From positions 62,001-126,000 of the IMG/VR virus record IMGVR_UViG_3300027759_000045: 64,000 bases of DNA; one strand, given 5' to 3'. Numbering within the stretch: position 1 is the stretch's first letter; every line of letters begins with the position of its first letter. Shown here piece after piece: positions 40,451-50,589 of this stretch. A program made the position numbers and the translations under genes. The notes below the pieces were generated by a model, which was not told the origin of the DNA, did not search any database, and was given only the letters and a program-made list of their open reading frames with translations.

Positions 40451-40612
40451 ATGAAGAAATTAGATTTAGAAAAACGAATGCGTGAAGTAAAGTACACAAC
40501 AGAGCACACGCTGACTCCGGAACAACGTGAAAAGTTGATTCGGGAAAAGTTGGAACGTGCCAGATTGATGCGTGAAACTCGTACGCGAGTCGAAAATCAA
40601 CTTTGGGCATAG
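40451..40612 (+). CDS. charged helical protein, 53 aa (MKKLDLEKRMREVK...NQLWA)
   Basis: AAGGA RBS; first ORF after the terminator. Confidence 0.65.
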   Translation: MKKLDLEKRMREVKYTTEHTLTPEQREKLIREKLERARLMRETRTRVENQLWA

Positions 40613-40714
40613 ATCCTAAAGTGTTGACAGGAAACGAGGTCCTGTGCTACACTATAAACAAGCACAAACGGGCGGCGACTAGGATGGAATCCCTTTTGTG
40701 GGACTAAAAATTAG
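40613..40714 (+). ncRNA. candidate structured RNA (may instead or also be a promoter)
   Basis: ATCCTA/TAGGAT, AGTGT/ACACT, ACAGGA/TCCTGT, GTGCT/AGCAC, TCCC/GGGA; also TTGACA-N18-TACACT at 40624-53. Confidence 0.4.
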
Positions 40715-40804
40715 ATCGTATTAAAGCATTCTTTAAGAACAGTCAGACTAAGTATTTTAGAGTGCTTTAATACACACATTGGAAACAGTGTGTTCGACGT
40801 ATAT

Positions 40805-40879
40805 GCACAGGTGGCGGAATGATTACGCAACGGATTGCAAATCCGTATCATGCAGGTTTGAGTCCTGTCCTGTGTTCCA
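40805..40879 (+). tRNA. tRNA-Cys(GCA)
   Basis: cloverleaf; ACGGA-TTGCAAA-TCCGT; U73; encoded CCA. Confidence 0.92.
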
Positions 40880-40898
40880 ATTTTTACAAAGTAAAGAT

Positions 40899-41660
40899 AT
40901 GAAATTATTTGCCACTGTGTTTTTTTGTGCAGTTTTATCCAATGTGTCAGCTCGCACCAGTGAGCCCACAGTGTTGGTCTACAACATTAATGCACAGCGC
41001 ACAGAACAGAGTCAACACGCCGATCAAGTCAGATCTATGGCCAGTGTGACCAAATTGATGACTGCTATGGTTGCATTGGATCACAACAGAAATCTACAAC
41101 AGACGGTGATGCTGGGGAAACACACCGGTAGTCGATTGCCGCCTGGTCTATACACTAGAGAACAGTTGTTGCTGGCCATGCTGGTCAGCAGTGACAACGG
41201 TGCAGCCGAGGCCATTGCACAGGACTATCCCGGAGGTCGATCTGCGTTTGTGGCTGAGATGAATCGACATGCTAAAATGTGGAATCTTGGAGATACTAAG
41301 TTTGTAGATCCTTCGGGTCTGGGTGTGTTCAATGTGTCCACTGCGCAGGACCTGGCAGAGATGGTACAGATTGCTGCCAGCTATTGGTTTATACAAGAAG
41401 CCAGCGGGCAGTCTACTGTACAATTGAAAAAGCCGGATCGAACTCGTGGCAACACTGTGAATCTTATTCACACATCCCGTCAACTGTTAGCAGAATTTGA
41501 CCGTGTGGTTGTGAGCAAGACTGGATTTACCAATCCCGCCGGTTGGTGTGTGGCCATGCTGGTGGAACGGAACAAACAACAGTATGTGGTCATTGTGTTG
41601 GGTGCCAGTACTAAACTGGATCGCAGTGAGATTATAAAGAAAGCGTTTAAAAATTTGTGA
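40899..41660 (+). CDS. peptidase S11 (D-Ala-D-Ala carboxy/endopeptidase, PbpG-like), secreted
   Basis: signal peptide; SxxK (ASVTK), SDN, KTG; start moved past tRNA-Cys. Confidence 0.9.
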   Translation: MKLFATVFFCAVLSNVSARTSEPTVLVYNINAQRTEQSQHADQVRSMASVTKLMTAMVALDHNRNLQQTVMLGKHTGSRLPPGLYTREQLLLAMLVSSDNGAAEAIAQDYPGGRSAFVAEMNRHAKMWNLGDTKFVDPSGLGVFNVSTAQDLAEMVQIAASYWFIQEASGQSTVQLKKPDRTRGNTVNLIHTSRQLLAEFDRVVVSKTGFTNPAGWCVAMLVERNKQQYVVIVLGASTKLDRSEIIKKAFKNL

Positions 41661-41693
41661 TACTAGCACTGTATTACATTCAAAGGAGTGGCC

Positions 41694-42293
41694 ATGTCAA
41701 AAGTATTTTATCTCAACTTACCTCAACTTCCAGACAAAATTTATAATAAATTAGTCGAAATTTGTTATTCAACTGTGCTAAATGAACAATCTCGTCTTTG
41801 GACACATGATTTTCATCGTGGCGAGTTGGTGGTTGCCACAATCGATGGTGGAATAGTTGTACCAGATGATTTGTTGGTAAAAGAGTTAGACCTACTTTAC
41901 AAAGATTATTTTCCCGGCCAAGAACTTCTTTTCACTACTTCTAGAATCAGCAATGTGGTTGGACAAAAAAGTATATTGCCACCGCACTGTGATCGCAAAA
42001 GAAAACTGGCCATCAACTATGTTTTAAAAACTGGTGGGTCACAAGTTTCGACTTGTTTTTACAAAGAACGTAGATCTACTCCAACACTCGACACTGCTGA
42101 GAATAGATATTACAAGGATCTCACTGTTGACTTTCTTGAGGTAATTCCTGAAAAAACTTGGCACTGTTTTGATGTTCAAACTTTTCACAGTGTCAACGAT
42201 ATAGAGACAGATAGATTTTTCTTTTCAATAATTTTAAAAACAACCAACCCTTCAATAGAAGAATTTTCTTTGAAGTACAAGAATTTAATGTAG
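41694..42293 (+). CDS. 2OG-Fe(II) oxygenase-like protein
   Basis: LPPHCD...FHSV....R. Confidence 0.6.
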   Translation: MSKVFYLNLPQLPDKIYNKLVEICYSTVLNEQSRLWTHDFHRGELVVATIDGGIVVPDDLLVKELDLLYKDYFPGQELLFTTSRISNVVGQKSILPPHCDRKRKLAINYVLKTGGSQVSTCFYKERRSTPTLDTAENRYYKDLTVDFLEVIPEKTWHCFDVQTFHSVNDIETDRFFFSIILKTTNPSIEEFSLKYKNLM

Positions 42294-42322
42294 GTGTGGG
42301 TCGAGTCCTGTCACCTATTCCA
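42291..42322 (+). pseudogene. tRNA 3'-half remnant / minihelix ending TCCA
   Basis: TAGGTG/CACCTA stem, GGGTCGAGTCC T-loop-like sequence, CCA. Confidence 0.45.
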
Positions 42323-42328
42323 ATTTCA

Positions 42329-42420
42329 GGAAGATGATGCAGCGGGGTTGGTCCTGCGACTGGCCTTGAAAACCAGGTTCTCTTAACAGGGATGGGGTTC
42401 GACTCCTCCGTCTTCCGCCA
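42329..42420 (+). tRNA. tRNA-Ser(TGA), 8/4 fold
   Basis: 8-bp acceptor GGAAGATG/CGTCTTCC, 4-bp T stem, long variable arm, G73, loop CTTGAAA. Confidence 0.85.
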
Positions 42421-42424
42421 ACAA

Positions 42425-42514
42425 GGTGTGGTCCTATAATGGTATTAGAGCAGATTGCTAATCTGTCGCTCGGCGTAATCCGAGTTCTGAGTTCGAGTCT
42501 CAGTCACACCGCCA
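42425..42514 (+). tRNA. tRNA-Ser(GCT)
   Basis: GCAGA-TTGCTAA-TCTGT, long variable arm, G73. Confidence 0.92.
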
Positions 42515-42519
42515 ACATT

Positions 42520-42595
42520 GCCGACGTAGCTCATCAGGTAGAGCACCAGACTGAAAATCTGGGTGTGACTGGTTCGAGTCCAGTCGTTGGTACCA
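42520..42595 (+). tRNA. tRNA-Phe(GAA)
   Basis: CCAGA-CTGAAAA-TCTGG. Confidence 0.93.
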
Positions 42596-42599
42596 ATCT

Positions 42600-42674
42600 G
42601 GGTCTTTGGTGAAATGGATATCATGCTTGGCTTCGAACCAAGTGGTGTGGGTTCGATTCCTGCAGGACCCGCCA
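42600..42674 (+). tRNA. tRNA-Arg(TCG)
   Basis: CTTGG-CTTCGAA-CCAAG. Confidence 0.92.
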
Positions 42675-42678
42675 ACAC

Positions 42679-42752
42679 AGCCCGTTAGCTCAATGGTAGA
42701 GCACTCGACTGATAATCGAGCGACAGAGGATCGTTACCTCTACAGGCTACCA
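42679..42752 (+). tRNA. tRNA-Ile(GAT), non-canonical T loop
   Basis: CTCGA-CTGATAA-TCGAG; T arm AGAGG-ATCGTTA-CCTCT. Confidence 0.88.
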
Positions 42753-42775
42753 ACAATTTTTACAGAGTAGAATTA

Positions 42776-43318
42776 ATGAAAGATTTAATATTAATCGCAT
42801 TGAAAGAAGAAGCACCCAACATAGCTTTCAGTATGAAAGTTTTTTTCACTGGGGTAGGAAAAGTAAATGCCGCAATGACTACAGCTGAAATGATTGCTAA
42901 GTACCGCCCCGATCGTATTATCAACTTTGGTACAGCTGGTGGAGTCACTGTTAAGTCAGGATTTCACCAAGTGACCAAGTTTATACAACGTGACATGATG
43001 TGCTGTGAGTTGGGTAGTCTGCCAGGTCAAACACCATTCGAAGATGGTGTTGTTTTAGATTTTGGCAAGGGGTTGACCTGCAGTACAGGTGATAACTTTG
43101 TTACTGATAGTAATCTATTGATACCAGCCGACGTAGTGGATATGGAAGCATACGCTATAGCAAAGGCATGTAAAAAACATAACGTAGAATTTTTATGTTA
43201 CAAGTTTGTTAGTGATGGTGCTAATGAAGATTCATTAAATGATTGGCGCACAACTGTTAGTCAAGGGCAACTTCACTATCTAAATAAACTTAAAGAATTA
43301 AATGTATCTCTGGTGTAA
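42776..43318 (+). CDS. mtnN: 5'-methylthioadenosine/SAH nucleosidase
   Basis: ALKEE, TGVGKVNAA, NFGTAGG, STGDNF, VDMEAYAIAKAC, KFVSD. Confidence 0.9.
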   Translation: MKDLILIALKEEAPNIAFSMKVFFTGVGKVNAAMTTAEMIAKYRPDRIINFGTAGGVTVKSGFHQVTKFIQRDMMCCELGSLPGQTPFEDGVVLDFGKGLTCSTGDNFVTDSNLLIPADVVDMEAYAIAKACKKHNVEFLCYKFVSDGANEDSLNDWRTTVSQGQLHYLNKLKELNVSLV

Positions 43319-43377
43319 TGGCAGCACCGCGGTCTCCAAAACCGTCAGTCAAGGTTCGAGTCCTTGGAGGTACGCCA
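43304..43377 (+). tRNA. tRNA-Trp(CCA)
   Basis: GCGGT-CTCCAAA-ACCGT; 5' end overlaps the mtnN stop. Confidence 0.9.
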
Positions 43378-43382
43378 GTTTA

Positions 43383-43456
43383 GCTCTTATAGTATAATGG
43401 CATTACATGCCCTTGGTAAGGGTAAAACACAAGTTCAATTCTTGTTAAGAGCACCA
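43383..43456 (+). tRNA. tRNA-Thr(GGT)
   Basis: TGCCC-TTGGTAA-GGGTA. Confidence 0.88.
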
Positions 43457-43460
43457 AATA

Positions 43461-43579
43461 ACCCTACAGTGAGCAGGGTATACTAAAGTACTAAGTTGAC
43501 CATTTAATGCCGTTTTGCTATAATAGAAACAAGTTAAGAAATTAGCTGGATCTGCAAATAACCCTACACAGTGTAGGGT
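43461..43579. repeat. two 19-bp palindromic sites 100 bp apart
   Basis: ACCCTACAGTGAGCAGGGT (43461-79) and perfect ACCCTACAC-A-GTGTAGGGT (43561-79), both preceded by AAATA. Confidence 0.75.
43496..43524 (+). promoter_or_regulatory. sigma70 promoter (first of tandem pair)
   Basis: TTGACC-N17-TATAAT. Confidence 0.85.
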
Positions 43580-43593
43580 GTTTGCAAAACAAA

Positions 43594-43622
43594 TTGACTA
43601 GATATAGCCATTGTGTTATACT
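43594..43622 (+). promoter_or_regulatory. sigma70 promoter (second of tandem pair)
   Basis: TTGACT-N17-TATACT. Confidence 0.8.
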
Positions 43623-43627
43623 AGAGA

Positions 43628-43661
43628 CTAGTTAGGAAATTAACTAGACGTTCTTTAAAAA
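43628..43661 (+). promoter_or_regulatory. boxB-like hairpin plus boxA-like antitermination signal
   Basis: CTAGTTA-GGAAAT-TAACTAG then CGTTCTTTAAAAA. Confidence 0.6.
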
Positions 43662-43691
43662 GTTATTGTTTTTGGTAACCCGCAAGGGTTG

Positions 43692-43906
43692 CTATTTTAA
43701 AATGTATTAAAGGTTACCTACACCGTTAGGGATCTAAGGCGAGGACAGTGGGGCCGCCCACGCTCAAGCTAGGTCTATGAAACCGGGCAGAAATGTCCAG
43801 AAAAGCGGCGGAGCATGTAGGCAGTAATGACCGTGCAGGCCTATAGCAGACGGTGCTATAGGTAGACATAGATGCACAATGGTTCCTTTAGTATGTTTTA
43901 AAATAG
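43692..43906 (+). ncRNA. unidentified ~215-nt multibranched RNA
   Basis: 22-bp closing stem with three G-U pairs and at least five internal helices. Confidence 0.65.
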
Positions 43907-43913
43907 TAGAATT

Positions 43914-43989
43914 TGGTCTGTTCGTATAGAGGTTATTACTGTGGATTGTCTATCCACTTACGGGGGTTCGATTCCCCCACAGACCGCCA
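43914..43989 (+). tRNA. tRNA-Asp(GTC)
   Basis: GTGGA-TTGTCTA-TCCAC; G73. Confidence 0.92.
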
Positions 43990-43995
43990 AGTTTT

Positions 43996-44060
43996 GAGAG
44001 TCACATCGCCTGGACACTTCCTTTGGTAACGAAGCACTAGGTCCTGCAACCGTGGCTCTC
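43996..44060 (+). ncRNA. 65-nt rod-like structured element
   Basis: GAGAGTCAC/GTGGCTCTC, CCTGG/CTAGG, CTTC/GAAG nested. Confidence 0.4.
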
Positions 44061-44068
44061 CCCTTTTT

Positions 44069-44143
44069 GCTCGATTCGTCTATCGGTTAGGACATCTGGT
44101 TTTCATCCAGGCAAGAGCGGTTCGATTCCGCTATCGAGTACCA
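44069..44143 (+). tRNA. tRNA-Glu(TTC)
   Basis: TCTGG-TTTTCAT-CCAGG. Confidence 0.92.
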
Positions 44144-44144
44144 A

Positions 44145-44343
44145 ATCCCGTTACTATTTTCGTTAAAATAGCGTTTGATTAGCGATAGAGATCCGGTGGC
44201 AGAAGACCGTAAGTGTAGGGCTGGAAACTACCCCTCGGAATCTGATAGGCAGTATCCTTCTGCACACAGACATTAGAATAAAAAGGATGGACAGAGTAAC
44301 CGCTCAATTAAGGGCTGGCATGGAAACCAGTAGCTTATCCTAA
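44145..44343 (+). ncRNA. unidentified structured RNA domain A
   Basis: no ORF; CTATTTT/AAAATAG, GCAGAAG/CTTCTGC, CTGG/CCAG, GGAT/ATCC. Confidence 0.55.
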
Positions 44344-44346
44344 CAT

Positions 44347-44431
44347 GGAGATGCCGCCGTAATGGTATGGCAGGAGACTGTAAATCTTCCGACTTCGGTC
44401 ACAACAGGTTCGATCCCTGTCATCTCCACCA
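44347..44431 (+). tRNA. tRNA-Tyr(GTA)
   Basis: GGAGA-CTGTAAA-TCTTC, long variable arm. Confidence 0.92.
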
Positions 44432-44432
44432 G

Positions 44433-44630
44433 AACCCGCCGGGGTAACGCCTGGCTAGTATGACCCGTACGAGAGAAGTGAGTTCGTTACTCAAGGGTGG
44501 TAGTCTTCTTACCAAAAGGCCGCTGGCAATGCGATAACGGTTCCTGTCGGGAAGCGGGTGGAAGGTACGAGTGAGGGGTATGATAGCGTCATATCTTTCT
44601 GTACTATAATTACCGCCGGGGGATGCAGAG
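44433..44630 (+). ncRNA. unidentified pseudoknotted RNA domain B
   Basis: GC-rich non-coding stretch, at least five hairpins, and a long-range GGTGGTAGT(44496-504)/ATTACCGCC(44609-17) pairing. Confidence 0.6.
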
Positions 44631-44635
44631 CATTT

Positions 44636-44711
44636 GGGGGATTGGTATACTTGGCTAACACACCTGGTTTGCAACCAGGAGCAAACGGTTCGAATCCGTT
44701 ATCCTCCACCA
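44636..44711 (+). tRNA. tRNA-Ala(TGC)
   Basis: CCTGG-TTTGCAA-CCAGG; G3-U70. Confidence 0.92.
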
Positions 44712-44730
44712 TTTTATAAAAGGAAATTGT

Positions 44731-44874
44731 ATGAAACGTAAACCGATCGTGCGCGAACGTAACTGCTTCGTTCGTCTGGCACTGTTCCGCAAAGCAGGTG
44801 CGCATCGCAAGAGCAACAAGGCTCTGCGTCGAGCACAAAAACAAAGCCCATTAGGGGGTGAAACTTTAAGGTGA
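44731..44874 (+). CDS. small very basic protein, 47 aa (MKRKPIVRERN...FRKAGAHRKSNKALRR...)
   Basis: AAGGA RBS; 3' end overlaps tRNA-Lys. Confidence 0.55.
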   Translation: MKRKPIVRERNCFVRLALFRKAGAHRKSNKALRRAQKQSPLGGETLR

Positions 44875-44927
44875 AGTAACGGACTTTTAATCCGTAAAAC
44901 AGGGATCGTTCCCCTGCACCCCTACCA
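44854..44927 (+). tRNA. tRNA-Lys(TTT), non-canonical T loop
   Basis: ACGGA-CTTTTAA-TCCGT; T arm CAGGG-ATCGTTC-CCCTG. Confidence 0.87.
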
Positions 44928-45020
44928 TATAAAAGCACTCTAAACTGGACGCAGGTTCTGTGAAGTAACACCTCGGATTGATCGCCGAGAAGGTATGGAG
45001 AATAAGAGTGTTTCTATATG
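44926..45020 (+). other. long stem (15/16 bp) enclosing ~63 nt
   Basis: CATATAAAAGCACTCT / AGAGTGTTTCTATATG. Confidence 0.55.
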
Positions 45021-45048
45021 GTAAGAATACCAGTCAATAAATAATGTT

Positions 45049-45783
45049 ATGAAAATTAAACTACCTCAAGAATTGCACTGGTTCTGCCCAGTGGCAGCAC
45101 CTGACCTAATTAGATTAGGTGGAAAAATGGATGGTGGCTACATTGTGCCACGTTCAGCAGTGGAACAAGCACAGGGCCTGCTGAGTTTTGGACTGGGTGA
45201 CGATTTTACATTTGACCAAGACTGGCATGATCTCAAGCCCCAGGATCCAATTCAGATGTATGACGCCAGTGTTACCAGAGATACCATGCGTATCAGCATC
45301 AATACGCCGGTTCGCGGACATCTGGACATTCGAACCATGTACGATGAATTCTTTCAGGGCAATGTAAAACATTGGCCAGAGTTTATTGGTCCTGAGAACT
45401 TTGTTCGAGCCCTGGACAGAATGGGCGTGGATCAAGTGTTTATTAAAATGGATATCGAAGGTGGCGAATACAGTTTGATTGAAAGTATTTTACAACATCG
45501 AGATCGTATCGTGGGTGTCGCAATGGAATGGCATAACTGTGCAAATCGTAGCGAGCAATGGCGCCGAGCTGTGCAACGCTGGCAAGAGCACTATGCTATA
45601 GTACATGTACACGGAAATAACCATGTGGGATTTGATTCAGATGGTGTGTTTGGATGTATGGAACTGACACACATTCGCCGAGACTTGGTTCCTGGAAATG
45701 AACTGCGTAAAGAGTCTTACATACACGGTTTAGATTATTCTAACGTGGCTGGTCTTACTGATATTGAATACTATTTTGATTAA
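45049..45783 (+). CDS. FkbM-like methyltransferase
   Basis: LIRLGGKMDGGY, LSFGLGDD, FIKMDIEGGEY, HVHGNN. Confidence 0.75.
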   Translation: MKIKLPQELHWFCPVAAPDLIRLGGKMDGGYIVPRSAVEQAQGLLSFGLGDDFTFDQDWHDLKPQDPIQMYDASVTRDTMRISINTPVRGHLDIRTMYDEFFQGNVKHWPEFIGPENFVRALDRMGVDQVFIKMDIEGGEYSLIESILQHRDRIVGVAMEWHNCANRSEQWRRAVQRWQEHYAIVHVHGNNHVGFDSDGVFGCMELTHIRRDLVPGNELRKESYIHGLDYSNVAGLTDIEYYFD

Positions 45784-45786
45784 TTT

Positions 45787-45862
45787 GGTGATGTAGCTTA
45801 GACGGTAGAGCAATTGCTTCATACGCATTAGGTCGGTGGTTCGATACCACCCATCACCACCA
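45787..45862 (+). tRNA. tRNA(CAT), elongator Met or Ile2
   Basis: loop TTCATAC; paired 1:72, so not initiator; identity unresolved. Confidence 0.8.
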
Positions 45863-45872
45863 AACAAATAAT

Positions 45873-45948
45873 GCGGCTGTAGCTCAGTTGGTAGAGTACT
45901 TGCTTGCCAAGCAAGACGTCACCGGTTCGAACCCGGTTAGCCGCTCCA
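45873..45948 (+). tRNA. tRNA-Gly(GCC)
   Basis: CTTGC-TTGCCAA-GCAAG; U73. Confidence 0.94.
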
Positions 45949-45959
45949 ACATTTATTAC

Positions 45960-46033
45960 TGGGGGTTAGTGTAGCGGTAACACTACAGACTTTGACTCTG
46001 TCATCACTGGTTCGATCCCAGTACCCTCTGCCA
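45960..46033 (+). tRNA. tRNA-Gln(TTG)
   Basis: ACAGA-CTTTGAC-TCTGT; unpaired 1:72, G73. Confidence 0.92.
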
Positions 46034-46057
46034 TCTCTGCCCTTATCTTGGGTGGTA

Positions 46058-46867
46058 TCAAAGATTCTGTTGGGTTGATCCAATAATAATGCTGTTGGGT
46101 TGATCCAACAGCAGATCAACAACCAAATGCACACGTTGGGTTGTTCCTTGATTTTGAACTTGATGCCACGTTAAATTGTTAAGTCTGTACAGCCAACCTA
46201 AAGACATGTGTTCTTGACTGTCAGATTTTCCAGTAAAAGTTACTTGACGGTTGGTTTGCAGTGGTATGTGAAATCTACAATAGTGTTCAAAATAACGACC
46301 TCCGTCGATATGTAGCAGAACACTACCACCTGGCTGCATGCAGTTTAAAACACTGGTACCAATGGCCTTGGCATTCATTTTTTGTTGTGTCCAGTGTAAA
46401 AGTTTAGTCACACCGGGCAGTCGCACTTGCCATTCAGTGTCTACTGAGTCAAGATTTTTGTAATAATCCTTCAACTCAGTTATATTATCATTCGATGCGT
46501 GAGTGCGCAGAAAAATTGATTGGGTTTTATTTACAAAATTCTGTTGGACTGGTGAAGTAGTGTCAGTGACACTATCATGATGTTTAGCTAGGTAAGTTTG
46601 GATATATAAATCTGGTTGTGTCTGCGCCCAATCTATGTTGTCTATTTCGGCTATAGCCGCATTCAGTATAGATTCGGGTACCTGGCTGATTGCATGCGCT
46701 AACAACGGTGGGCGGGCAGCCTGCTTGAAACTGCCTGGTACATAACTATGCACGGTCTCGCATTCCTGACGTATGAAATCAGGTAGAAGTGGATAAGAAT
46801 CTTCGGTGGCACAGTCAGGCCATGCAGGATCTCTTACTGCTTGATAAAATTGATGCCAGTCATTCAT
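46058..46867 (-). CDS. Asp/Asn beta-hydroxylase-like 2OG-Fe(II) oxygenase
   Basis: PGGSVLLHIDGG...RFHIPL...WHQVQNQG...RVHLVVD; TAAATA upstream. Confidence 0.8.
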   Translation of the reverse strand: MNDWHQFYQAVRDPAWPDCATEDSYPLLPDFIRQECETVHSYVPGSFKQAARPPLLAHAISQVPESILNAAIAEIDNIDWAQTQPDLYIQTYLAKHHDSVTDTTSPVQQNFVNKTQSIFLRTHASNDNITELKDYYKNLDSVDTEWQVRLPGVTKLLHWTQQKMNAKAIGTSVLNCMQPGGSVLLHIDGGRYFEHYCRFHIPLQTNRQVTFTGKSDSQEHMSLGWLYRLNNLTWHQVQNQGTTQRVHLVVDLLLDQPNSIIIGSTQQNL

Positions 46868-46892
46868 GATCTGATATTTACCAATTAATGTT

Positions 46893-46968
46893 AGGGGACA
46901 TAAATTAACGGCCAACGCAACTGGCTTTTGCCCAGTAAATCAGAGTTCAATTTTTGTACCCTCTGCTA
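46893..46968 (+). pseudogene. degenerate tRNA, Gln-like body
   Basis: ACTGG-CTTTTGC-CCAGT arm; 3' GTACCCTCTGCTA nearly identical to the tRNA-Gln end; broken D and T arms, no CCA. Confidence 0.6.
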
Positions 46969-46970
46969 TT

Positions 46971-47045
46971 CTCGCTTTAGTATAATGGATAATACAAAGA
47001 GCTTCTACCTCTTGAATGTGGGTTCGATTCCTGCAAGCGAGACCA
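46971..47045 (+). tRNA. tRNA-Arg(TCT)
   Basis: AAGAG-CTTCTAC-CTCTT. Confidence 0.92.
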
Positions 47046-47050
47046 AACAT

Positions 47051-47126
47051 GGAGTTGTTAGTGTAAAGGTCAACACCACGGATTGTGATTCCGTTAATAC
47101 GGGTTCGATTCCCGTACGACTCCCCA
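47051..47126 (+). tRNA. tRNA-His(GTG)
   Basis: ACGGA-TTGTGAT-TCCGT; encoded G-1:C73. Confidence 0.92.
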
Positions 47127-47130
47127 AACG

Positions 47131-47319
47131 TTATTGATAATCTTCTTTAAAAGACTTGATCCAACTGACCGCAGAGTCATGATCACTAAAGTAACGCATA
47201 ATTAGCCGATCATTGAAAATATCATTGACAAAAATGTAAGATGTGTTATACTCACTAAGTGACAGGTGCACTTGCAAATGTCCACTGGTTGAAATAAAAT
47301 CTTGTGTTTGCGTCTGCAT
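47131..47319 (-). CDS. hypothetical protein, 62 aa
   Basis: minus-strand TATAAATA 5 nt before the ATG. Confidence 0.6.
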   Translation of the reverse strand: MQTQTQDFISTSGHLQVHLSLSEYNTSYIFVNDIFNDRLIMRYFSDHDSAVSWIKSFKEDYQ

Positions 47320-47376
47320 GCACATATTTATACCTCAATCCTGTACCAATAAATACCCCACACAACAAGGAAACAA

Positions 47377-47532
47377 ATGAAAACCACATCAGCATTTAAA
47401 CTCAGCAAAAGAACAAAAACATTATTGGCATTGCTAAAGTTTAGAGATCAACATGATCGTAATGGATTTAAAAGAGCCATGGTTGACGCACAAGCAACCC
47501 CAGTGGCATTTTCGCCCAAAGACCGCAAGTAA
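47377..47532 (+). CDS. small basic protein, 51 aa (MKTTSAFKLSKRTK...KDRK)
   Basis: TAAATA plus AAGGA RBS. Confidence 0.65.
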   Translation: MKTTSAFKLSKRTKTLLALLKFRDQHDRNGFKRAMVDAQATPVAFSPKDRK

Positions 47533-47538
47533 GATTAT

Positions 47539-47614
47539 TCCCCAATAGCTCAGTCGGTAGAGTAGCAGACTGTTAATCTGTTGGTCCGTGGTTCGAGCCC
47601 ACGTTGGGGAGCCA
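47539..47614 (+). tRNA. tRNA-Asn(GTT)
   Basis: GCAGA-CTGTTAA-TCTGT. Confidence 0.94.
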
Positions 47615-47621
47615 ATTAAAA

Positions 47622-47706
47622 GGGGATGTGGCGTAATTGGTAGCCGCACTGGATTTAGGTTCCAGCGAGTAAAATCGTGAGAGTTCGAGTCTCTCCATCC
47701 CCACCA
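47622..47706 (+). tRNA. tRNA-Leu(TAG)
   Basis: CTGGA-TTTAGGT-TCCAG, long variable arm. Confidence 0.92.
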
Positions 47707-47718
47707 AGGTAAACTATT

Positions 47719-48219
47719 ATGGAAAAAATCAATCTCGCCAAGGTAAAAAAGTTCATTGAGGCGCAGACACCCGAAACTCGAATTTATCTCGGCTGTGACT
47801 CTGAGCGCCTTAGAGTAAACGGGGTCTGGCATGCCGACTATGTGTTGGCTGTTGTGGTTCACATCAACGGCAACAACGGTTGCAAACTATTTGGCGAAGT
47901 ACAGCGTGAGCGAGACTTTGATCAAAAAACTTCTCGTCCCAGTATGCGATTGATGAATGAAGTTTACAAAGTATCCGAACTGTACCTAAAGCTGGGCGAA
48001 GTGCTAGAAGGCCGTCATGTTGAAGTGCATTTGGATATTAACCCAGATGATCAGTACGGTTCTAGCTGTGTGATATCACAGGCAGTGGGCTATATCAAAG
48101 GCACTTGCAATGTGACACCATCAGTTAAACCCAATGCGTTTGCTGCCAGCTATGCTGCCGATCGTTTTAAAGGATTATCAACTGCATGTCATCGTGCCAG
48201 AATCAACGAAAGATTCTAA
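47719..48219 (+). CDS. RNase H-like YkuK/DUF458 family protein
   Basis: IYLGCDS...RLMNEVYK...EVHLDIN...VKPNAFAASYAAD. Confidence 0.8.
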   Translation: MEKINLAKVKKFIEAQTPETRIYLGCDSERLRVNGVWHADYVLAVVVHINGNNGCKLFGEVQRERDFDQKTSRPSMRLMNEVYKVSELYLKLGEVLEGRHVEVHLDINPDDQYGSSCVISQAVGYIKGTCNVTPSVKPNAFAASYAADRFKGLSTACHRARINERF

Positions 48220-48226
48220 AAAGTTG

Positions 48227-48254
48227 TTGACTTTTAATTTTTTTCTGTTATAAT
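48227..48254 (+). promoter_or_regulatory. sigma70 promoter, extended -10
   Basis: TTGACT-N16-TATAAT with TGn. Confidence 0.75.
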
Positions 48255-48264
48255 TACAACTGTA

Positions 48265-48354
48265 GGAAGCGTGTCCGAGTGGCCGATGGAACTGGTCTAC
48301 TAAACCAGCATACGAGTAATCGTATCGTGAGTTCGAATCTCACCGCTTCCGCCA
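48265..48354 (+). tRNA. tRNA-Ser(ACT), rare A34 anticodon
   Basis: CTGGT-CTACTAA-ACCAG; Ser-type long variable arm and G73. Confidence 0.85.
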
Positions 48355-48360
48355 AGTTAC

Positions 48361-48435
48361 CGCGGGGTACGTCAGTGGTAGACCGCCAGGCTCATAACCT
48401 GGAAGCCGGAGGTTCGAGTCCTTCCCCCGCAACCA
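48361..48435 (+). tRNA. initiator tRNA-fMet(CAT)
   Basis: C1:A72 mismatch, CGCGGGG acceptor, loop CTCATAA. Confidence 0.88.
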
Positions 48436-48453
48436 TTTGTTTTAGGAAGCATT

Positions 48454-48840
48454 ATGAACTCTAATCCTGAGCGCAAGAACAATTTAGAATACGACTTGCG
48501 GAATACCAAGTGGATCTGCGACAAGGCCAAGGCCAGCGAATTTTACGCACAAAATCTGTATGCTGCCATGTGCAATCAAGACTGGCAAAAAAATGAAGTT
48601 TGGCCGTTGCTCAAAAGCGAAACATACAGTTGCAGTTGGCGCTATGCCGGTGGCATTGTGGCCGACATGGTCGAAAAGGGTGACTATATCGATTGGTACT
48701 GCTCAGGTATTCGTGGAGAACAAGGCATCGATTACGAGCCTCCTCTAACTTTTGTGCCCGAAGGTACAGTCACAGAAGAAATACGCGAAGACTTTTTTAA
48801 ATTAGGATGGATTCCTATTGATCAAGTAGACGATGAATAA
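48454..48840 (+). CDS. hypothetical protein, 128 aa
   Basis: ORF with AGGA RBS. Confidence 0.8.
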   Translation: MNSNPERKNNLEYDLRNTKWICDKAKASEFYAQNLYAAMCNQDWQKNEVWPLLKSETYSCSWRYAGGIVADMVEKGDYIDWYCSGIRGEQGIDYEPPLTFVPEGTVTEEIREDFFKLGWIPIDQVDDE

Positions 48841-48849
48841 ATAAGTGTT

Positions 48850-49270
48850 ATTGCTGTATGAAGCAAAGAGAAAAGTGTTCTGGACGGGGGTGCGAATCCC
48901 CCCAGGTCCACCAAAAAGACTTTTACCCTAGACCGCAAGAGCCAACTACATGTTGCGGAAAAGGATGTGAAGGATGTGTCTGGATTAGCTATTTTGAAGC
49001 ACTAGCTAGATGGGAGAGTCTTTTTGGAGGGCCTGACCTAGATTCGACAGGGCAACAAGTAAATTAGTGGACAGCTCGGGAATGTGAAACCCGTAGGGTT
49101 GGGGAGACTCGGCCGAAGAAGCAAAAAACGTAAATGCAAACGTAAACAAAACCGTAACTGTTTCAGGCAAGAATATCAAGTTCTCTGCTCGTTCAGCCAA
49201 GGAAGCATTGGCAGTCTAAACACTGCCTAGGGTTTTTGGTAATTTATCCTCGTAACAGAATTAAATTACC
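48850..49270 (+). ncRNA. ssrA: circularly permuted two-piece tmRNA
   Basis: acceptor piece first (T arm GGGGG-TGCGAAT-CCCCC, CAGGTCC-A-CCA ending 48913); coding piece from GGGCCTGAC..ATTCGAC at 49029 with G3-U70; tag ANVNKTVTVSGKNIKFSARSAKEALAV at 49136-49219; 5' end approximate. Confidence 0.9.
48858..49067 (+). CDS. Oxidored-like (CC..GC..CVW..Y) small protein nested in the tmRNA gene
   Basis: PRPQEPTTCCGKGCEGCVWISYFEALARWE encoded in the tmRNA spacer. Confidence 0.5.
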   Translation: MKQREKCSGRGCESPQVHQKDFYPRPQEPTTCCGKGCEGCVWISYFEALARWESLFGGPDLDSTGQQVN

Positions 49271-49275
49271 TTTTT
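49238..49275 (+). terminator. hairpin plus U-tract at the tmRNA 3' end
   Basis: GGTAATTTA/TAAATTACC then TTTTT. Confidence 0.6.
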
Positions 49276-49299
49276 ATTCAATAACAAAAATCCACCGGC

Positions 49300-50589
49300 A
49301 TGAACATTCCCTTAGACAATTTGTACCACTGGGTGCAATCGATCATACCTGTTCCTGCAGTAATCTATAGATTTTATCCACACGGTAGTAAAAATATTGT
49401 TGATCTTACTTCACTGAGTCCCCGACCCGATGAGGAACATTATGTTGATATTCCAGTTGTTGTCCACGACCAGGAACCATTGGATTATAATCTGTACACA
49501 AATATTGATCTGGCATCATTGCAGCAATTGTGGCAAACCATGGCGTTAAGCAATCCTGTTGCCACAGAAATAAGATGCCAGGCCTTAGTTGATAAAAATT
49601 TATTGGCAATACCATTAGCAGGTGGATCGCTTCATGACCAGGCAATTTTACTGCATTCTGAAAAAAATTCTGTTGACTTAGAACAGTATTCTCAAAATAA
49701 TTTTTTGCCGGTTTACCATTGGTGTCATGCAATTATTGCTCGTGACTGGTATAGATTTGCTGAAATAGATGCTCGGCTTGTTCCACAATCTCATATACAA
49801 GAAAAATTCCTTATATATAATCGCGCATGGGGCAATACCAGAGAATACAGATTAAAGTTCATGGAGTTATTGATTAAACATGGATTACATGAATCAAGTA
49901 AAACCAGTATATCAGCCAGAGCCGAAGGCAATCAAGGACATCATTATCATGATCATAAATTTAAAAATGTCAATTTTGCGCTTGAAGACAGCACTGTATT
50001 AGATCTGCTCGAAGATAATCAATTCAACAGCAACGAAAGCGCACAGTACAATCATGATGATTTCAATTCAACTGCAATAAGTGTAGTTTTAGAAACCATG
50101 TTTGACGACTCAAGAATTCACTTGACAGAAAAGACACTGAGACCAATTGCCTGCGGTCATCCATTTGTATTGGCAGCGGGGCCACGCAGTTTAGAGTATC
50201 TTAGAAGTTACGGATTTCGAACATTTGCTCCATGGATTGACGAAAGTTATGATCATGAACCTGACAGTTTGCGCAGACTTGAAAAAATTATCAACAGCAT
50301 GAATAAAATTAATTTGCTTGATGCCGAGGAGTTTGATCAATTTCTAATAGAAATCAAACACATAGCCGATTTTAACAAAAAACATTTTTTCAGCGATGCA
50401 TTTCAACAACAGGTGATTGAAGAATTAAAAACTAATTTAACACATGCAATTCAACACATTAAAAAACCACGTGGCATATTTCCAAGAGCATTGAAAAAAA
50501 AAATATTAAAAGCAGATCCCAGTTTCTTTGATACAAAATGTCATTATGACTATTATTGCGAAGTGATTCGGTTGCTGAGATCTCAATGA
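49300..50589 (+). CDS. GT10-like protein (paralogue)
   Basis: VVLETMF....IHLTEKTLRPIACGHPFVLAAG...GFRTF...IDESYD. Confidence 0.5.
   Translation: MNIPLDNLYHWVQSIIPVPAVIYRFYPHGSKNIVDLTSLSPRPDEEHYVDIPVVVHDQEPLDYNLYTNIDLASLQQLWQTMALSNPVATEIRCQALVDKNLLAIPLAGGSLHDQAILLHSEKNSVDLEQYSQNNFLPVYHWCHAIIARDWYRFAEIDARLVPQSHIQEKFLIYNRAWGNTREYRLKFMELLIKHGLHESSKTSISARAEGNQGHHYHDHKFKNVNFALEDSTVLDLLEDNQFNSNESAQYNHDDFNSTAISVVLETMFDDSRIHLTEKTLRPIACGHPFVLAAGPRSLEYLRSYGFRTFAPWIDESYDHEPDSLRRLEKIINSMNKINLLDAEEFDQFLIEIKHIADFNKKHFFSDAFQQQVIEELKTNLTHAIQHIKKPRGIFPRALKKKILKADPSFFDTKCHYDYYCEVIRLLRSQ

What the first reader, a model, noticed from the sequence alone, without database searches (positions are those of the whole stretch)
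44145..44630. Two ~200-nt ornate RNA domains bracketing tRNA-Tyr: possibly one large GOLLD/ROOL-like RNA
Seen: both flanks of tRNA-Tyr lack credible ORFs and are helix-dense. Domain B has GCCGGG/CCTGGC, TGAGT/ACTCA, AGAAG/CTTCT, TTCC/GGAA, a 10-bp AGGGGTATGA/TCATATCTTT helix and a 9-bp long-range pseudoknot. Known: GOLLD and ROOL are large phage-associated RNAs typically found next to tRNAs, and I recall GOLLD can carry tRNAs in a variable linker. Inference: one ~490-nt RNA with an embedded tRNA, or two new ncRNAs. Family membership is not established.
Basis: partly seen in the sequence, partly recalled or inferred. Interest (0 to 1): 0.7.

Follow-up and report, generated by a model that had tools for sequence, protein, structure and literature searches.

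The report
Two new phage tRNA-operon RNAs
The two ~200-base stretches either side of tRNA-Tyr in this 347-kb freshwater jumbo phage are two separate, previously undescribed structured RNA genes, not one GOLLD/ROOL-like RNA, and both are far more abundant in lake RNA samples than the protein-coding genes beside them.

Summary
The window is part of a 346,856-bp IMG/VR jumbo phage with a 26-tRNA array.

**Domain B (44432-44635)** belongs to a family found in at least 170 viral contigs.
- Covariation is strong: 96-97% of cells are paired and 25-30 of 49 pairs have compensatory changes.
- It has a loop-loop pseudoknot.
- The phages that carry it share only 63-97% PolB identity with the window.

**Domain A (44144-44346)** is a second, unrelated family.
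- It has a pseudoknot and belongs to a wider superfamily of about 210-nt modules.
- It is missing from all nine closest relatives, where tRNA-Glu and tRNA-Tyr lie 5 nt apart in eight of them.
- So A, the tRNA and B are not one RNA.

**Known families.** Rfam gives no GOLLD, ROOL or other match, even at E≤10. Real GOLLD RNAs do occur elsewhere in some relatives' arrays. T4 rnaC/rnaD occupy the same kind of position but are not homologous.

**Expression.** In lake metatranscriptomes A and B reach assembler depths of hundreds to about 16,000, against 0 for the adjacent ORFs and 151 for the phage tmRNA.

**Most likely reading.** They are cassettes in the tRNA operon, cut out by tRNA-processing nucleases, that act in trans as stable RNAs. 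Their function is unknown.

The parts
43496..43622 (+). Two sigma-70-like promoters (TTGACC-17-TATAAT at 43496-43524; TTGACT-17-TATACT at 43594-43622), the likely start of the transcription unit that holds tRNA-Asp, tRNA-Glu, A, tRNA-Tyr, B and tRNA-Ala
   Evidence: 11/12 and 10/12 matches, both with an extended -10 TG. The number of sites is not above shuffles, so the assignment is inferred. No + strand terminator-like site up to 46100.
44069..44143 (+). tRNA-Glu(UUC); its 3' CCA end abuts RNA A
44144..44346 (+). RNA A: a ~203-nt structured ncRNA cassette, member of an 'A superfamily' with a conserved 5' end, a conserved 3' domain (GGACAGAGUAAC...) and a variable middle
   Evidence: R2 model hit 44141-44345, 224.5 bits. 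21 close and about 30 divergent full-length relatives in related arrays. 95% paired, 28/43 pairs compensatory. Absent from the nine nearest relatives. Metatranscriptome depth up to 16,447.
44154..44184 (+). A: 5' hairpins H1 (44154-44171) and H2 (44172-44184)
   Evidence: in H1 all 7 pairs show compensatory changes across the superfamily
44194..44236 (+). A: conserved hairpin CGGU-GGCAGAAG-ACCG (44194-44209) and variable hairpin (44215-44236)
44241..44288 (+). A: stem 44241-44244/44267-44270 enclosing hairpin 44249-44263, whose loop AUCCU (44254-44258) pairs with AGGAU (44284-44288) as an H-type pseudoknot
   Evidence: the pseudoknot pairs covary (T-A 11 / C-G 5; C-G 12 / T-A 1 / T-G 1)
44289..44337 (+). 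A: conserved 3' domain: GGACAGAGUAAC hairpin (44294-44305) and terminal hairpin (44309-44337)
   Evidence: terminal helix: 6 of 9 pairs compensatory. Metatranscriptome contigs of four runs end at 44312-44314.
44347..44431 (+). tRNA-Tyr(GUA), an ordinary separate gene and not an embedded linker
   Evidence: 41.7 bits
44432..44635 (+). RNA B: a ~204-nt structured ncRNA, single copy in the genome, member of a family in at least 170 IMG/VR contigs
   Evidence: R1 model 192.3 bits; family size; covariation; depth up to 3,713
44438..44493 (+). B 5' domain: P1 (44438-44443/44450-44455), P2 (44458-44462/44466-44470, invariant loop), purine-rich linker (44471-44478), P3 (44479-44483/44489-44493); P1 loop AACG (44446-44449) pairs with P3 loop CGUU (44485-44488)
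   Evidence: Kissing interaction from mutual information (columns 24-68 G-C 56 / A-T 25) and from the swap to AACG/CGUU in window-type variants, read from alignments.
44496..44527 (+). B: P4 hairpin (GGUGGUAGUCUU...AAGGCCGCUGGC)
   Evidence: Invariant in the first sample because the search pattern fixed it. In the second, independent sample 4 distal pairs show compensatory changes.
44540..44624 (+). B 3' domain: long-range helices P6 (44540-44545/44619-44624 and 44548-44549/44617-44618), P7 (44554-44557/44613-44616), P8 (44564-44569/44600-44605) and variable P9 (44574-44583/44589-44598); conserved UAUAAUUA in between
   Evidence: Most members have a k-turn-like GUGAUG/UGA internal loop between P8 and P9; the window's copy has a bulged helix there instead (read from the alignment).
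44636..44711 (+). tRNA-Ala(UGC), starts 3 nt after the conserved end of B

Best explanation
A (44144-44346) and B (44432-44635) are two independent genes for compact, pseudoknotted, non-coding RNAs of about 200 nt. They belong to two unrelated families that have not been described before.

They sit as cassettes in the phage's polycistronic tRNA operon.

**Shown:**
- Conserved structure backed by covariation.
- Each has its own distribution across genomes.
- Very high steady-state RNA level on this stretch, while neighbouring ORFs give nothing.
- Low-depth RNA contigs that bridge tRNA-Tyr to B and B to tRNA-Ala.

**Inferred:**
- They are transcribed with the tRNAs from the promoters near 43.5 kb.
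- They are released by the enzymes that mature the flanking tRNAs: RNase P at the 5' end of the downstream tRNA, and endo/exonucleolytic 3' maturation of the upstream CCA-encoding tRNA.
- They then accumulate as stable trans-acting RNAs, as T4 RNA C and RNA D do.

**Function is not established.** The many invariant nucleotides outside helices and the pseudoknots suggest a precise three-dimensional fold. Most B members (not the window's own copy) also have a k-turn-like loop. Such a fold would bind a partner (protein, tRNA or ribosome) or would self-assemble, rather than act as a simple antisense RNA. The setting in a tRNA/tmRNA island suggests a role in translation or tRNA metabolism during infection.
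For: **B**
All 51 new loci were confirmed by the model.
- 97.5% and 96.4% of cells paired; 25 and 30 of 49 pairs compensatory; covariation 0.439 against at most 0.089 for slid controls; 0 of 500 shuffles reached the observed values.
- Loop-loop pseudoknot.
- Single copy in the genome.
- Host phages have 63-97% PolB identity to the window.
- B abuts a tRNA 3' end within 4 nt in 50 of 83 distinct contexts (nine tRNA identities) and a downstream tRNA within 10 nt in 30.

**A**
- 21 close and about 30 divergent full-length relatives.
- 95% paired, 28/43 pairs compensatory.
- Covarying pseudoknot.
- Precise presence/absence inside the 5-nt Glu-Tyr spacer.

**Not coding:**

**Expression (summed assembler word depth)**

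| Run | A | B | Other |
|---|---|---|---|
| X16 | 16,447 | 3,713 | ORF stretch 44717-45727: 0 |
| X18 | 4,457 | 3,469 | ORF stretch: 0 |
| X15 | 453 | 296 | ORF stretch: 0 |
| X19 | 2,041 | 2,222 | phage tmRNA 151; ORFs 0 |

- Sources.
- At least 17 freshwater RNA runs hold B's words.
- Bridging contigs 44343-44435, 44424-44562 and 44572-44665.

**Layout precedent:** T4 rnaD and rnaC follow tRNA-Arg by 1 and 6 nt. Their roles are unknown (PMC3014915).
Against: - The RNA evidence comes from assembled contigs of metatranscriptomes. Their depths are summed over related phages at 90% likeness or more and carry no strand information, so exact ends, strand and the processing route are not shown.
- Contigs from four runs end at 44154-44162 and 44312-44314, some fused to Illumina adapters. 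The abundant form of A may therefore be a core of about 155 nt without its terminal hairpin, which simple RNase P/exonuclease trimming does not predict.
- No partner, target or activity is known.
- The alignments used for A4 and A5 were fitted to the models, which inflates pair counts somewhat.
- The short UGC/GCA closing helix of B is not supported (19 of 42 unpaired).
- The promoter calls are consensus matches only.
Confidence: 0.8

Rival explanations
1. One large GOLLD/ROOL-like ornate RNA of about 490 nt, with tRNA-Tyr embedded in a variable linker between two structured domains.
For: GOLLD and ROOL lie near tRNA islands of phages, and GOLLD can carry tRNAs in its linker (PMC12286853). True GOLLD RNAs with an embedded tRNA exist in arrays of related phages (L012:1864-2326 at 201.7 bits; L070:311-775 at 189.4 bits).
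Against: - No GOLLD or ROOL hit at E≤10 on the region or in the whole genome.
- No sequence similarity of A or B to the relative's GOLLD.
- A is absent from the nine nearest relatives, which keep B.
- The distance from A to B varies from 70 nt to 1.8 kb.
- B has nine different upstream tRNA neighbours.
- RNA depth falls 10- to 100-fold over tRNA-Tyr between A and B.
Confidence: 0.03
2. A and/or B are cis-acting processing elements, for example a new class of self-cleaving ribozyme that cuts at its own 5' edge and so frees the CCA end of the upstream tRNA.
For: Both start 0-4 nt after an encoded CCA in most contexts. Many invariant unpaired nucleotides and pseudoknots, as in ribozymes. Discrete contig ends within A.
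Against: - No match to any known ribozyme family in Rfam.
- In about 40% of contexts B has no abutting upstream tRNA.
- Ordinary tRNAs in the same arrays are spaced just as tightly without such elements.
- The very high accumulation fits a stable product rather than a discarded spacer.
Confidence: 0.08
3. B is a tRNA-interacting or tRNA-mimicking RNA. It would act as a decoy or sponge for host tRNA-targeting defence nucleases or tRNA-processing enzymes, or as a binder of tRNA 3' ends.
For: - The 5' domain has three hairpins, with the first and third loops pairing, which recalls the D-loop/T-loop elbow.
- Two invariant GGGUGG elements contain UGGN, the sequence a T-box uses to pair with NCCA (own knowledge; sequence).
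- It lies in a tRNA/tmRNA island and is very abundant.
Against: - No acceptor-like stem can be drawn, and neither the tRNA nor the T-box Rfam model matches.
- P2 has a 3-5-nt loop and no anticodon loop.
- The UGGN argument rests on invariant positions, so covariation cannot test it.
- No Ro60/TROVE protein in the genome.
Confidence: 0.1
4. The two stretches are ordinary degenerating spacers, tRNA pseudogenes or small protein genes.
For: Single-sequence folding energy is not unusual (z -0.43 and -1.75). The tRNA arrays of these phages are highly rearranged.
Against: - The cores are near-invariant across phages with only 63% PolB identity.
- Compensatory changes are abundant.
- No codon periodicity.
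- RNA is very abundant.
Confidence: 0.02

Closest known systems
T4 RNA C (species 1) and RNA D (species 2), the small stable RNAs of the T4 tRNA gene cluster
   Same: Non-coding RNAs of 119-139 nt encoded flush against a tRNA (1 and 6 nt gaps) inside a phage tRNA operon. They accumulate as stable RNAs and their function is unknown (PMC3014915). This is the closest analogue for layout and probable biogenesis.
   Different: No detectable homology: R1 and R2 score 10 bits or less on the T4 region with filters off. A and B are longer (~200 nt), pseudoknotted, and come from an uncultured freshwater jumbo-phage clade related to Atu_ph07/Phosso rather than to T4.
GOLLD RNA (Rfam RF02032)
   Same: Phage-encoded, lake-derived, next to or inside tRNA islands, rich in conserved structure, function unknown. 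Genuine GOLLDs occur in arrays of phages that also carry B.
   Different: A and B do not match the GOLLD model and show no sequence similarity to it. Each is about 200 nt rather than 400-800 nt. They are separate genes, and the tRNA between them is not a linker insert.
ROOL RNA (RF03087), raiA and OLE: other 'ornate' orphan RNAs
   Same: Many conserved nucleotides outside helices, pseudoknots, high abundance, no known partner. ROOL is also found near phage tRNA islands (PMC12286853).
   Different: No model match. The size differs (ROOL model 574 positions). Oligomer formation, the defining property recently shown for ROOL, GOLLD and OLE, could not be tested here (the tool needs a protein chain).
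Two-piece (permuted) tmRNA
   Same: The phage encodes one 4.2 kb downstream (48852-49219, 104.7 bits). Rfam gives a weak tmRNA_permuted hit across 44404-44627.
   Different: That hit (21.6-24.1 bits against a gathering score of 47) aligns only the T-arm and acceptor strand of tRNA-Tyr and GGGGAUG of B, across a 180-nt insertion. GGGGAUG covaries with an internal segment of B, not with a tRNA.

Membership tests
GOLLD (RF02032) | Match to the Rfam covariance model at or above the gathering score (150 bits) | tested here: not met
   No hit at E≤10 on 40500-49500 or on 44140-44640. 0 matches at E≤1 in the whole 346,856-bp genome. Positive controls: L012 201.7 bits, L070 189.4 bits, L124 144.5 bits (5'-cut).
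GOLLD (RF02032) | A single large RNA in which a tRNA, if present, sits in a variable linker between domains that always occur together | tested here: not met
   A is absent and B present in nine of nine close relatives. A-B spacing is 70 nt to 1.8 kb. B has nine different upstream tRNAs.
GOLLD / ROOL | Location in a phage or prophage next to a tRNA island | tested here: met
   26 tRNAs and a tmRNA at 40.8-54.3 kb of the window in a DTR-bounded virus record
ROOL (RF03087) | Match to the Rfam covariance model (gathering score 99.1 bits; 574 positions) | tested here: not met
   No hit at E≤10. None in the genome, though that search had no positive control.
GOLLD / ROOL / OLE | Homo-oligomeric RNA-only assembly (nanocage or dimer) | not testable with these tools
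   Complex prediction refuses RNA-only jobs. It needs native gels, mass photometry or cryo-EM.
T4 rnaC/rnaD-type stable RNAs of tRNA operons | Encoded flush with tRNAs in a phage tRNA operon and accumulating as a stable non-coding RNA | tested here: met
   Gaps of 0-4 nt to flanking tRNAs. Metatranscriptome depth 296-16,447 in four of the eight runs laid (X15, X16, X18, X19), against 0 for adjacent ORFs. T4 layout.
T4 rnaC/rnaD-type stable RNAs of tRNA operons | Sequence/structure homology to T4 rnaC or rnaD | tested here: not met
   R1 at most 3.3 bits and R2 at most 9.7 bits on T4 69000-75000 with filters off
tmRNA_permuted (RF04321) | Score at or above 47 bits, with tRNA-like domain, pseudoknots and tag reading frame | tested here: not met
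   21.6-24.1 bits. The alignment covers model positions 36-95 only and borrows the tRNA-Tyr T-arm.
Bacterial Y RNA (YrlA) / Ro60 system | Ro60 (TROVE) protein gene in the genome and a YrlA model match | tested here: not met
   No TROVE match in the genome, controls positive. YrlA hits fall only on tandem tRNAs elsewhere.
k-turn-containing RNAs (structural motif, not a family) | C-helix, 3-nt bulge, tandem sheared G.A pairs, NC-helix | tested here: inconclusive
   Most B members have P8-UGU-GA-U-P9 opposite P9-U-GA-P8, which fits the consensus (read from the alignment; motif definition from own knowledge). The window's own copy and about 8 of 50 others replace it with a Watson-Crick/G.U extension and a 4-nt bulge.

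The most novel reading that the evidence does not exclude
B, and perhaps the A superfamily, is a new class of functional RNA machine acting on the translation apparatus during jumbo-phage infection. It could be a new ribozyme or a tRNA/ribosome-binding RNA.

The A superfamily would act as a modular scaffold: conserved 5' and 3' ends, a hypervariable central module, and up to two or three paralogues per array. The variable middle would set target specificity, much as in a guide RNA.
Probability: 0.12. Interest if true: 0.9.

Novelty: categorically new. Interest (0 to 1): 0.72.

Why it matters
Large, highly conserved, pseudoknotted RNAs with no known function are rare, and several earlier ones proved to be ribozymes, riboswitches or self-assembling cages.

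Two such families appear here:
- They are core (B) or accessory (A) parts of the tRNA operons of a widespread clade of freshwater jumbo phages.
- They are absent from Rfam.
- In one lake RNA run (X19) their summed assembler depth is more than ten times that of the phage's own tmRNA.
- They sit among a larger set of about 200-nt modules (about 25 sequence clusters) interleaved with tRNAs.

This suggests that phage 'tRNA islands' are general expression platforms for structured RNAs. That bears on the unresolved roles of T4 RNA C/D, GOLLD and ROOL.

Caveats:
- The genomic niche itself is already known, and function remains open.
- Fragments of these RNAs may be among the anonymous candidates of 151 nt or less in a 2023 IMG/VR survey (PMC10690425). 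I could not check this.

Tried and rejected
- **Rfam at permissive thresholds** on 9 kb and on the 501 nt alone: only tRNAs and a spurious tmRNA_permuted hit.
- **blastn against 50,697 GenBank phage records:** only tRNA matches, nothing for A or B.
- **R1 and R2 on the nearest cultured phages** (Phosso, Atu_ph07, Vibrio 2.275.O, 121Q): nothing for B. For A, two hits of 11-13 bits; the one I checked, in 121Q, lies inside a structural-protein CDS.
- **Genome-contig scan:** spent on a pattern that was too loose. It returned 120 chance hits in unrelated bacteria, and R1 found no B in the 80 fetched as loci. Presence in cellular genomes is therefore untested.
- **Ro60/Y RNA idea:** no TROVE gene.
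- **Array-embedded ORFs** as possible partners: no informative Pfam or PHROG match. Found only PNP_UDP_1-like, RNaseH_like and unknowns.
- **Supplement of the IMG/VR csRNA catalogue:** not held.
- **Literature searches:** no description of these RNAs.
- **Ideas considered from sequence and dropped:** RNase P RNA (ACAGA-like motifs, no model hit), hammerhead (GAUGAG in the B linker, core incomplete), and a sarcin-ricin-loop likeness of GUACGAGAGAAG that is specific to the window's variant.

Full report
**Context.** The window is bases 62001-126000 of a 346,856-bp IMG/VR virus record with direct terminal repeats.
- Its family-B DNA polymerase is closest to the jumbo myoviruses Sinorhizobium phage Phosso (51%), Agrobacterium phage Atu_ph07 (47%) and E. 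coli phage 121Q (42%).
- Between 40.8 and 54.3 kb it carries 26 tRNA genes and a two-piece tmRNA (48852-49219, 104.7 bits).
- The finding covers the two spacers around tRNA-Tyr: A = 44144-44346, between tRNA-Glu and tRNA-Tyr; B = 44432-44635, between tRNA-Tyr and tRNA-Ala.

- Neither spacer holds a credible ORF.
- Taken alone the sequences fold no better than shuffles: z = -0.43 for A and -1.75 for B. So 'helix-dense' is not more than chance on one sequence.
- The comparative evidence is decisive. I fetched nine related loci through the neighbouring 244-aa ORF.
- B is conserved in all nine (72-98% identity), always directly 5' of tRNA-Ala. A is absent from all nine.
- The tRNA-Glu to tRNA-Tyr gap is 5 nt in eight of them and an unrelated 71 nt in the ninth.

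**RNA B.**
- A second pattern from the other end of the molecule found 51 further loci. My covariance model R1 confirmed all of them at 50-212 bits.
- On 50 diverse members, RNAalifold predicts 49 pairs, 25 of them with compensatory changes.
- 97.5% of cells are paired. The covariation score is 0.439, against at most 0.089 when the partners are slid, and 0 of 500 shuffles reach the observed values.
- The second sample gives 96.4%, 30/49 and 0.439. It also adds compensatory changes in P4, which the first pattern had held fixed.
- Layout in window coordinates (and direct reading):

| Element | Coordinates | Note |
|---|---|---|
| P1 | 44438-44455 | |
| P2 | 44458-44470 | invariant loop |
| linker | 44471-44478 | purine-rich |
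| P3 | 44479-44493 | |
| P4 | 44496-44527 | |
| P6 | 44540-44549 / 44617-44624 | long-range |
| P7 | 44554-44557 / 44613-44616 | the middle pair switches C-G / U-A / A-U |
| P8 | 44564-44569 / 44600-44605 | |
| P9 | 44574-44598 | variable |

- Mutual information adds a kissing interaction between the P1 and P3 loops. It reads GUC/GAC or AUC/GAU in most members and AACG/CGUU (44446-44449 / 44485-44488) in the window's type.
- Most members have a k-turn-like loop between P8 and P9. The window's copy does not.
- The short UGC/GCA closing helix is not supported.
- B is single-copy in the genome.
- The phages that carry it have 63-97% PolB identity to the window, yet long stretches of B are invariant.
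- In 83 distinct contexts B starts within 4 nt of a tRNA 3' end in 50 (nine tRNA identities). It ends within 10 nt of a tRNA in 30.

**RNA A.**
- A is also a family. blastn finds 76-89% homologues in about 22 of the B-bearing loci. They are always upstream of B on the same strand, at 70 nt to 1.8 kb, and most start right after a tRNA CCA.
- A model built from 16 of them (R2) also finds about 30 weaker, full-length modules of 206-214 nt (26-67 bits).
- These share the 5' end ((A/C)CCCGGUUAC plus a hairpin) and a 3' domain (GGACAGAGUAAC..., a stem and a terminal hairpin). The middle differs.
- On that alignment 95% of cells pair and 28 of 43 pairs are compensatory. Covariation is 0.383 against at most 0.067 for slid controls, though the alignment was fitted to the model.
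- The loop AUCCU (44254-44258) covaries with AGGAU (44284-44288), which makes a pseudoknot.
- In relatives without A the spacer reads CCA-NACAT-tRNA-Tyr. In the window A ends ...CCUAACAU. So A is a precise cassette insertion or deletion inside that 5-nt spacer.

**One RNA or two?** Two.
- A and B have different distributions, variable spacing and different neighbours.
- They show no similarity to each other beyond a short GAUG..CAGAG motif.

**Coding?** No. There is no third-position pattern (31/57, 31/59, 29/59 variable columns) and lengths fall in all three classes mod 3.

**Expression.** All figures are summed assembler word depths from Logan contigs.

| Run (lake metatranscriptome) | Over A | Over B | Comparison |
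|---|---|---|---|
| X16 | up to 16,447 | up to 3,713 | ORF stretch 44717-45727: 0; adjacent tRNA bins 0-82 across X15, X16 and X18 |
| X18 | up to 4,457 | up to 3,469 | ORF stretch: 0 |
| X15 | up to 453 | up to 296 | ORF stretch: 0 |
| X19 | 2,041 | 2,222 | phage tmRNA 151; every ORF bin 0 |

- Sources: for X15, X16 and X18; for X19.
- The silent ORFs in the same laid stretch argue against DNA carry-over.
- At least 17 freshwater, lake or river RNA runs hold B's words.
- Low-depth contigs bridge tRNA-Tyr to B and B to tRNA-Ala, as expected for precursors.
- Contigs from four runs end at 44154-44162 and 44312-44314, in some cases joined to Illumina adapter sequence. The abundant form of A may therefore be a shorter core. 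I leave this open.
- Limits: the data are assembled contigs, pooled over related phages at 90% likeness or more, without strand.

**Comparison with known families.**
- Rfam 15 (4,227 models) gives only tRNAs and a spurious tmRNA_permuted hit in the region, even at E≤10 on 501 nt.
- GOLLD and ROOL are absent from the whole genome.
- The GOLLD model does find true GOLLDs, each with an embedded tRNA, in three related arrays that also hold B: L012, L070 and L124.
- The closest analogue in layout is T4, where rnaD and rnaC follow tRNA-Arg by 1 and 6 nt and still have no known role (PMC3014915). R1 and R2 score 10 bits or less there.
- The nearest cultured jumbo phages have neither family.
- Literature searches found no description.
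- A 2023 IMG/VR survey lists anonymous candidates of at most 151 nt that could include fragments. I could not check them.

**Mechanism.**
- Shown: two conserved, pseudoknotted, non-coding, very abundant RNAs encoded flush with tRNAs.
- Inferred: co-transcription from the promoter-like sites at 43496-43524 and 43594-43622; release by RNase P and tRNA 3'-end maturation; action in trans.
- Function is not known. The invariant unpaired nucleotides and tertiary pairings point to a specific fold that binds a partner or self-assembles. The tRNA/tmRNA setting suggests translation or tRNA metabolism.
- Alternatives that remain possible but untested: self-cleaving processing elements, tRNA mimics or decoys, and oligomeric assemblies like ROOL or GOLLD.

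**Verdict.** The feature is real. It consists of two new RNA families in a known kind of genomic niche. The GOLLD/ROOL single-RNA reading is rejected.

Noticed in passing
L012:1864-2326, L070:311-775 (minus strand), L124:1-374: True GOLLD RNAs (201.7, 189.4 and 144.5 bits; L124's copy is cut at its 5' end). Those of L012 and L070 each have a tRNA embedded. They lie in tRNA arrays of related phages that also carry B. The window's own genome has none.
   Followed up: partly
window 48852-49219: Phage-encoded two-piece (permuted) tmRNA, 104.7 bits, tag peptide ANVNKTVTVSGKNIKFSARSAKEALAV. It is expressed in lake metatranscriptomes (depth 151 in X19). RNA contigs skip about 103-125 nt at 48913-49039, which may be the excised intervening segment or strain variation.
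   Followed up: partly
related loci L002-L129 and the window's array: The inter-tRNA spacers of 100-330 nt in these phage arrays fall into about 25 sequence clusters plus 75 singletons. Many are close to 200-215 nt, so A and B appear to be two of many RNA-sized cassettes interleaved with tRNAs.
   Followed up: partly
window 43700-43910: G+C-rich, strongly folding stretch inside the tRNA-Thr to tRNA-Asp spacer (whole spacer z = -5.4). It is 96% conserved in six relatives and missing from L004 and L006. RNA depth is modest (7-46). Possibly another small RNA.
   Followed up: no
window 43990-44068: The 79-nt tRNA-Asp to tRNA-Glu spacer is 89-96% conserved in all nine close relatives. Its nature is unknown.
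   Followed up: no
window 44731-44874: A 47-codon ORF for a very basic peptide (MKRKPIVRERN...) with a Shine-Dalgarno-like AAGGA upstream lies between tRNA-Ala and tRNA-Lys and overlaps the start of tRNA-Lys. The spacer is a conserved cluster (12 variants). The stretch 44794-44929 (the ORF's 3' part plus tRNA-Lys) matches a 'hypothetical protein' region of Synechococcus phage BUCT-ZZ01 at 78.7%.
   Followed up: no
window 42329-42416 (also L007:3876-3963): Sub-threshold tRNA-Sec model hit (36.6 bits, gathering score 47) just upstream of tRNA-Ser(GCU). ARAGORN does not call it. It may be an unusual long-arm tRNA.
   Followed up: no
L008/L009/L010 (3876-5356 in L008) and L004:4656-5350: Insertions of about 1.5 kb and about 0.7 kb sit exactly between tRNA-Tyr and B in some relatives. 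They are probably mobile genes of the kind common in phage tRNA clusters. I did not examine them.
   Followed up: no
window 48265-48354: tRNA-Ser with anticodon ACU (unmodified A34 is unusual in bacteria). It is conserved in the related arrays.
   Followed up: no
contig behind L071 (IMGVR_UViG_3300027749_002876, 524,565 bp): It carries two PolB copies, at 18.7 kb and 508.5 kb on opposite strands. The contig may be an assembly artefact rather than a true 524-kb genome.
   Followed up: no
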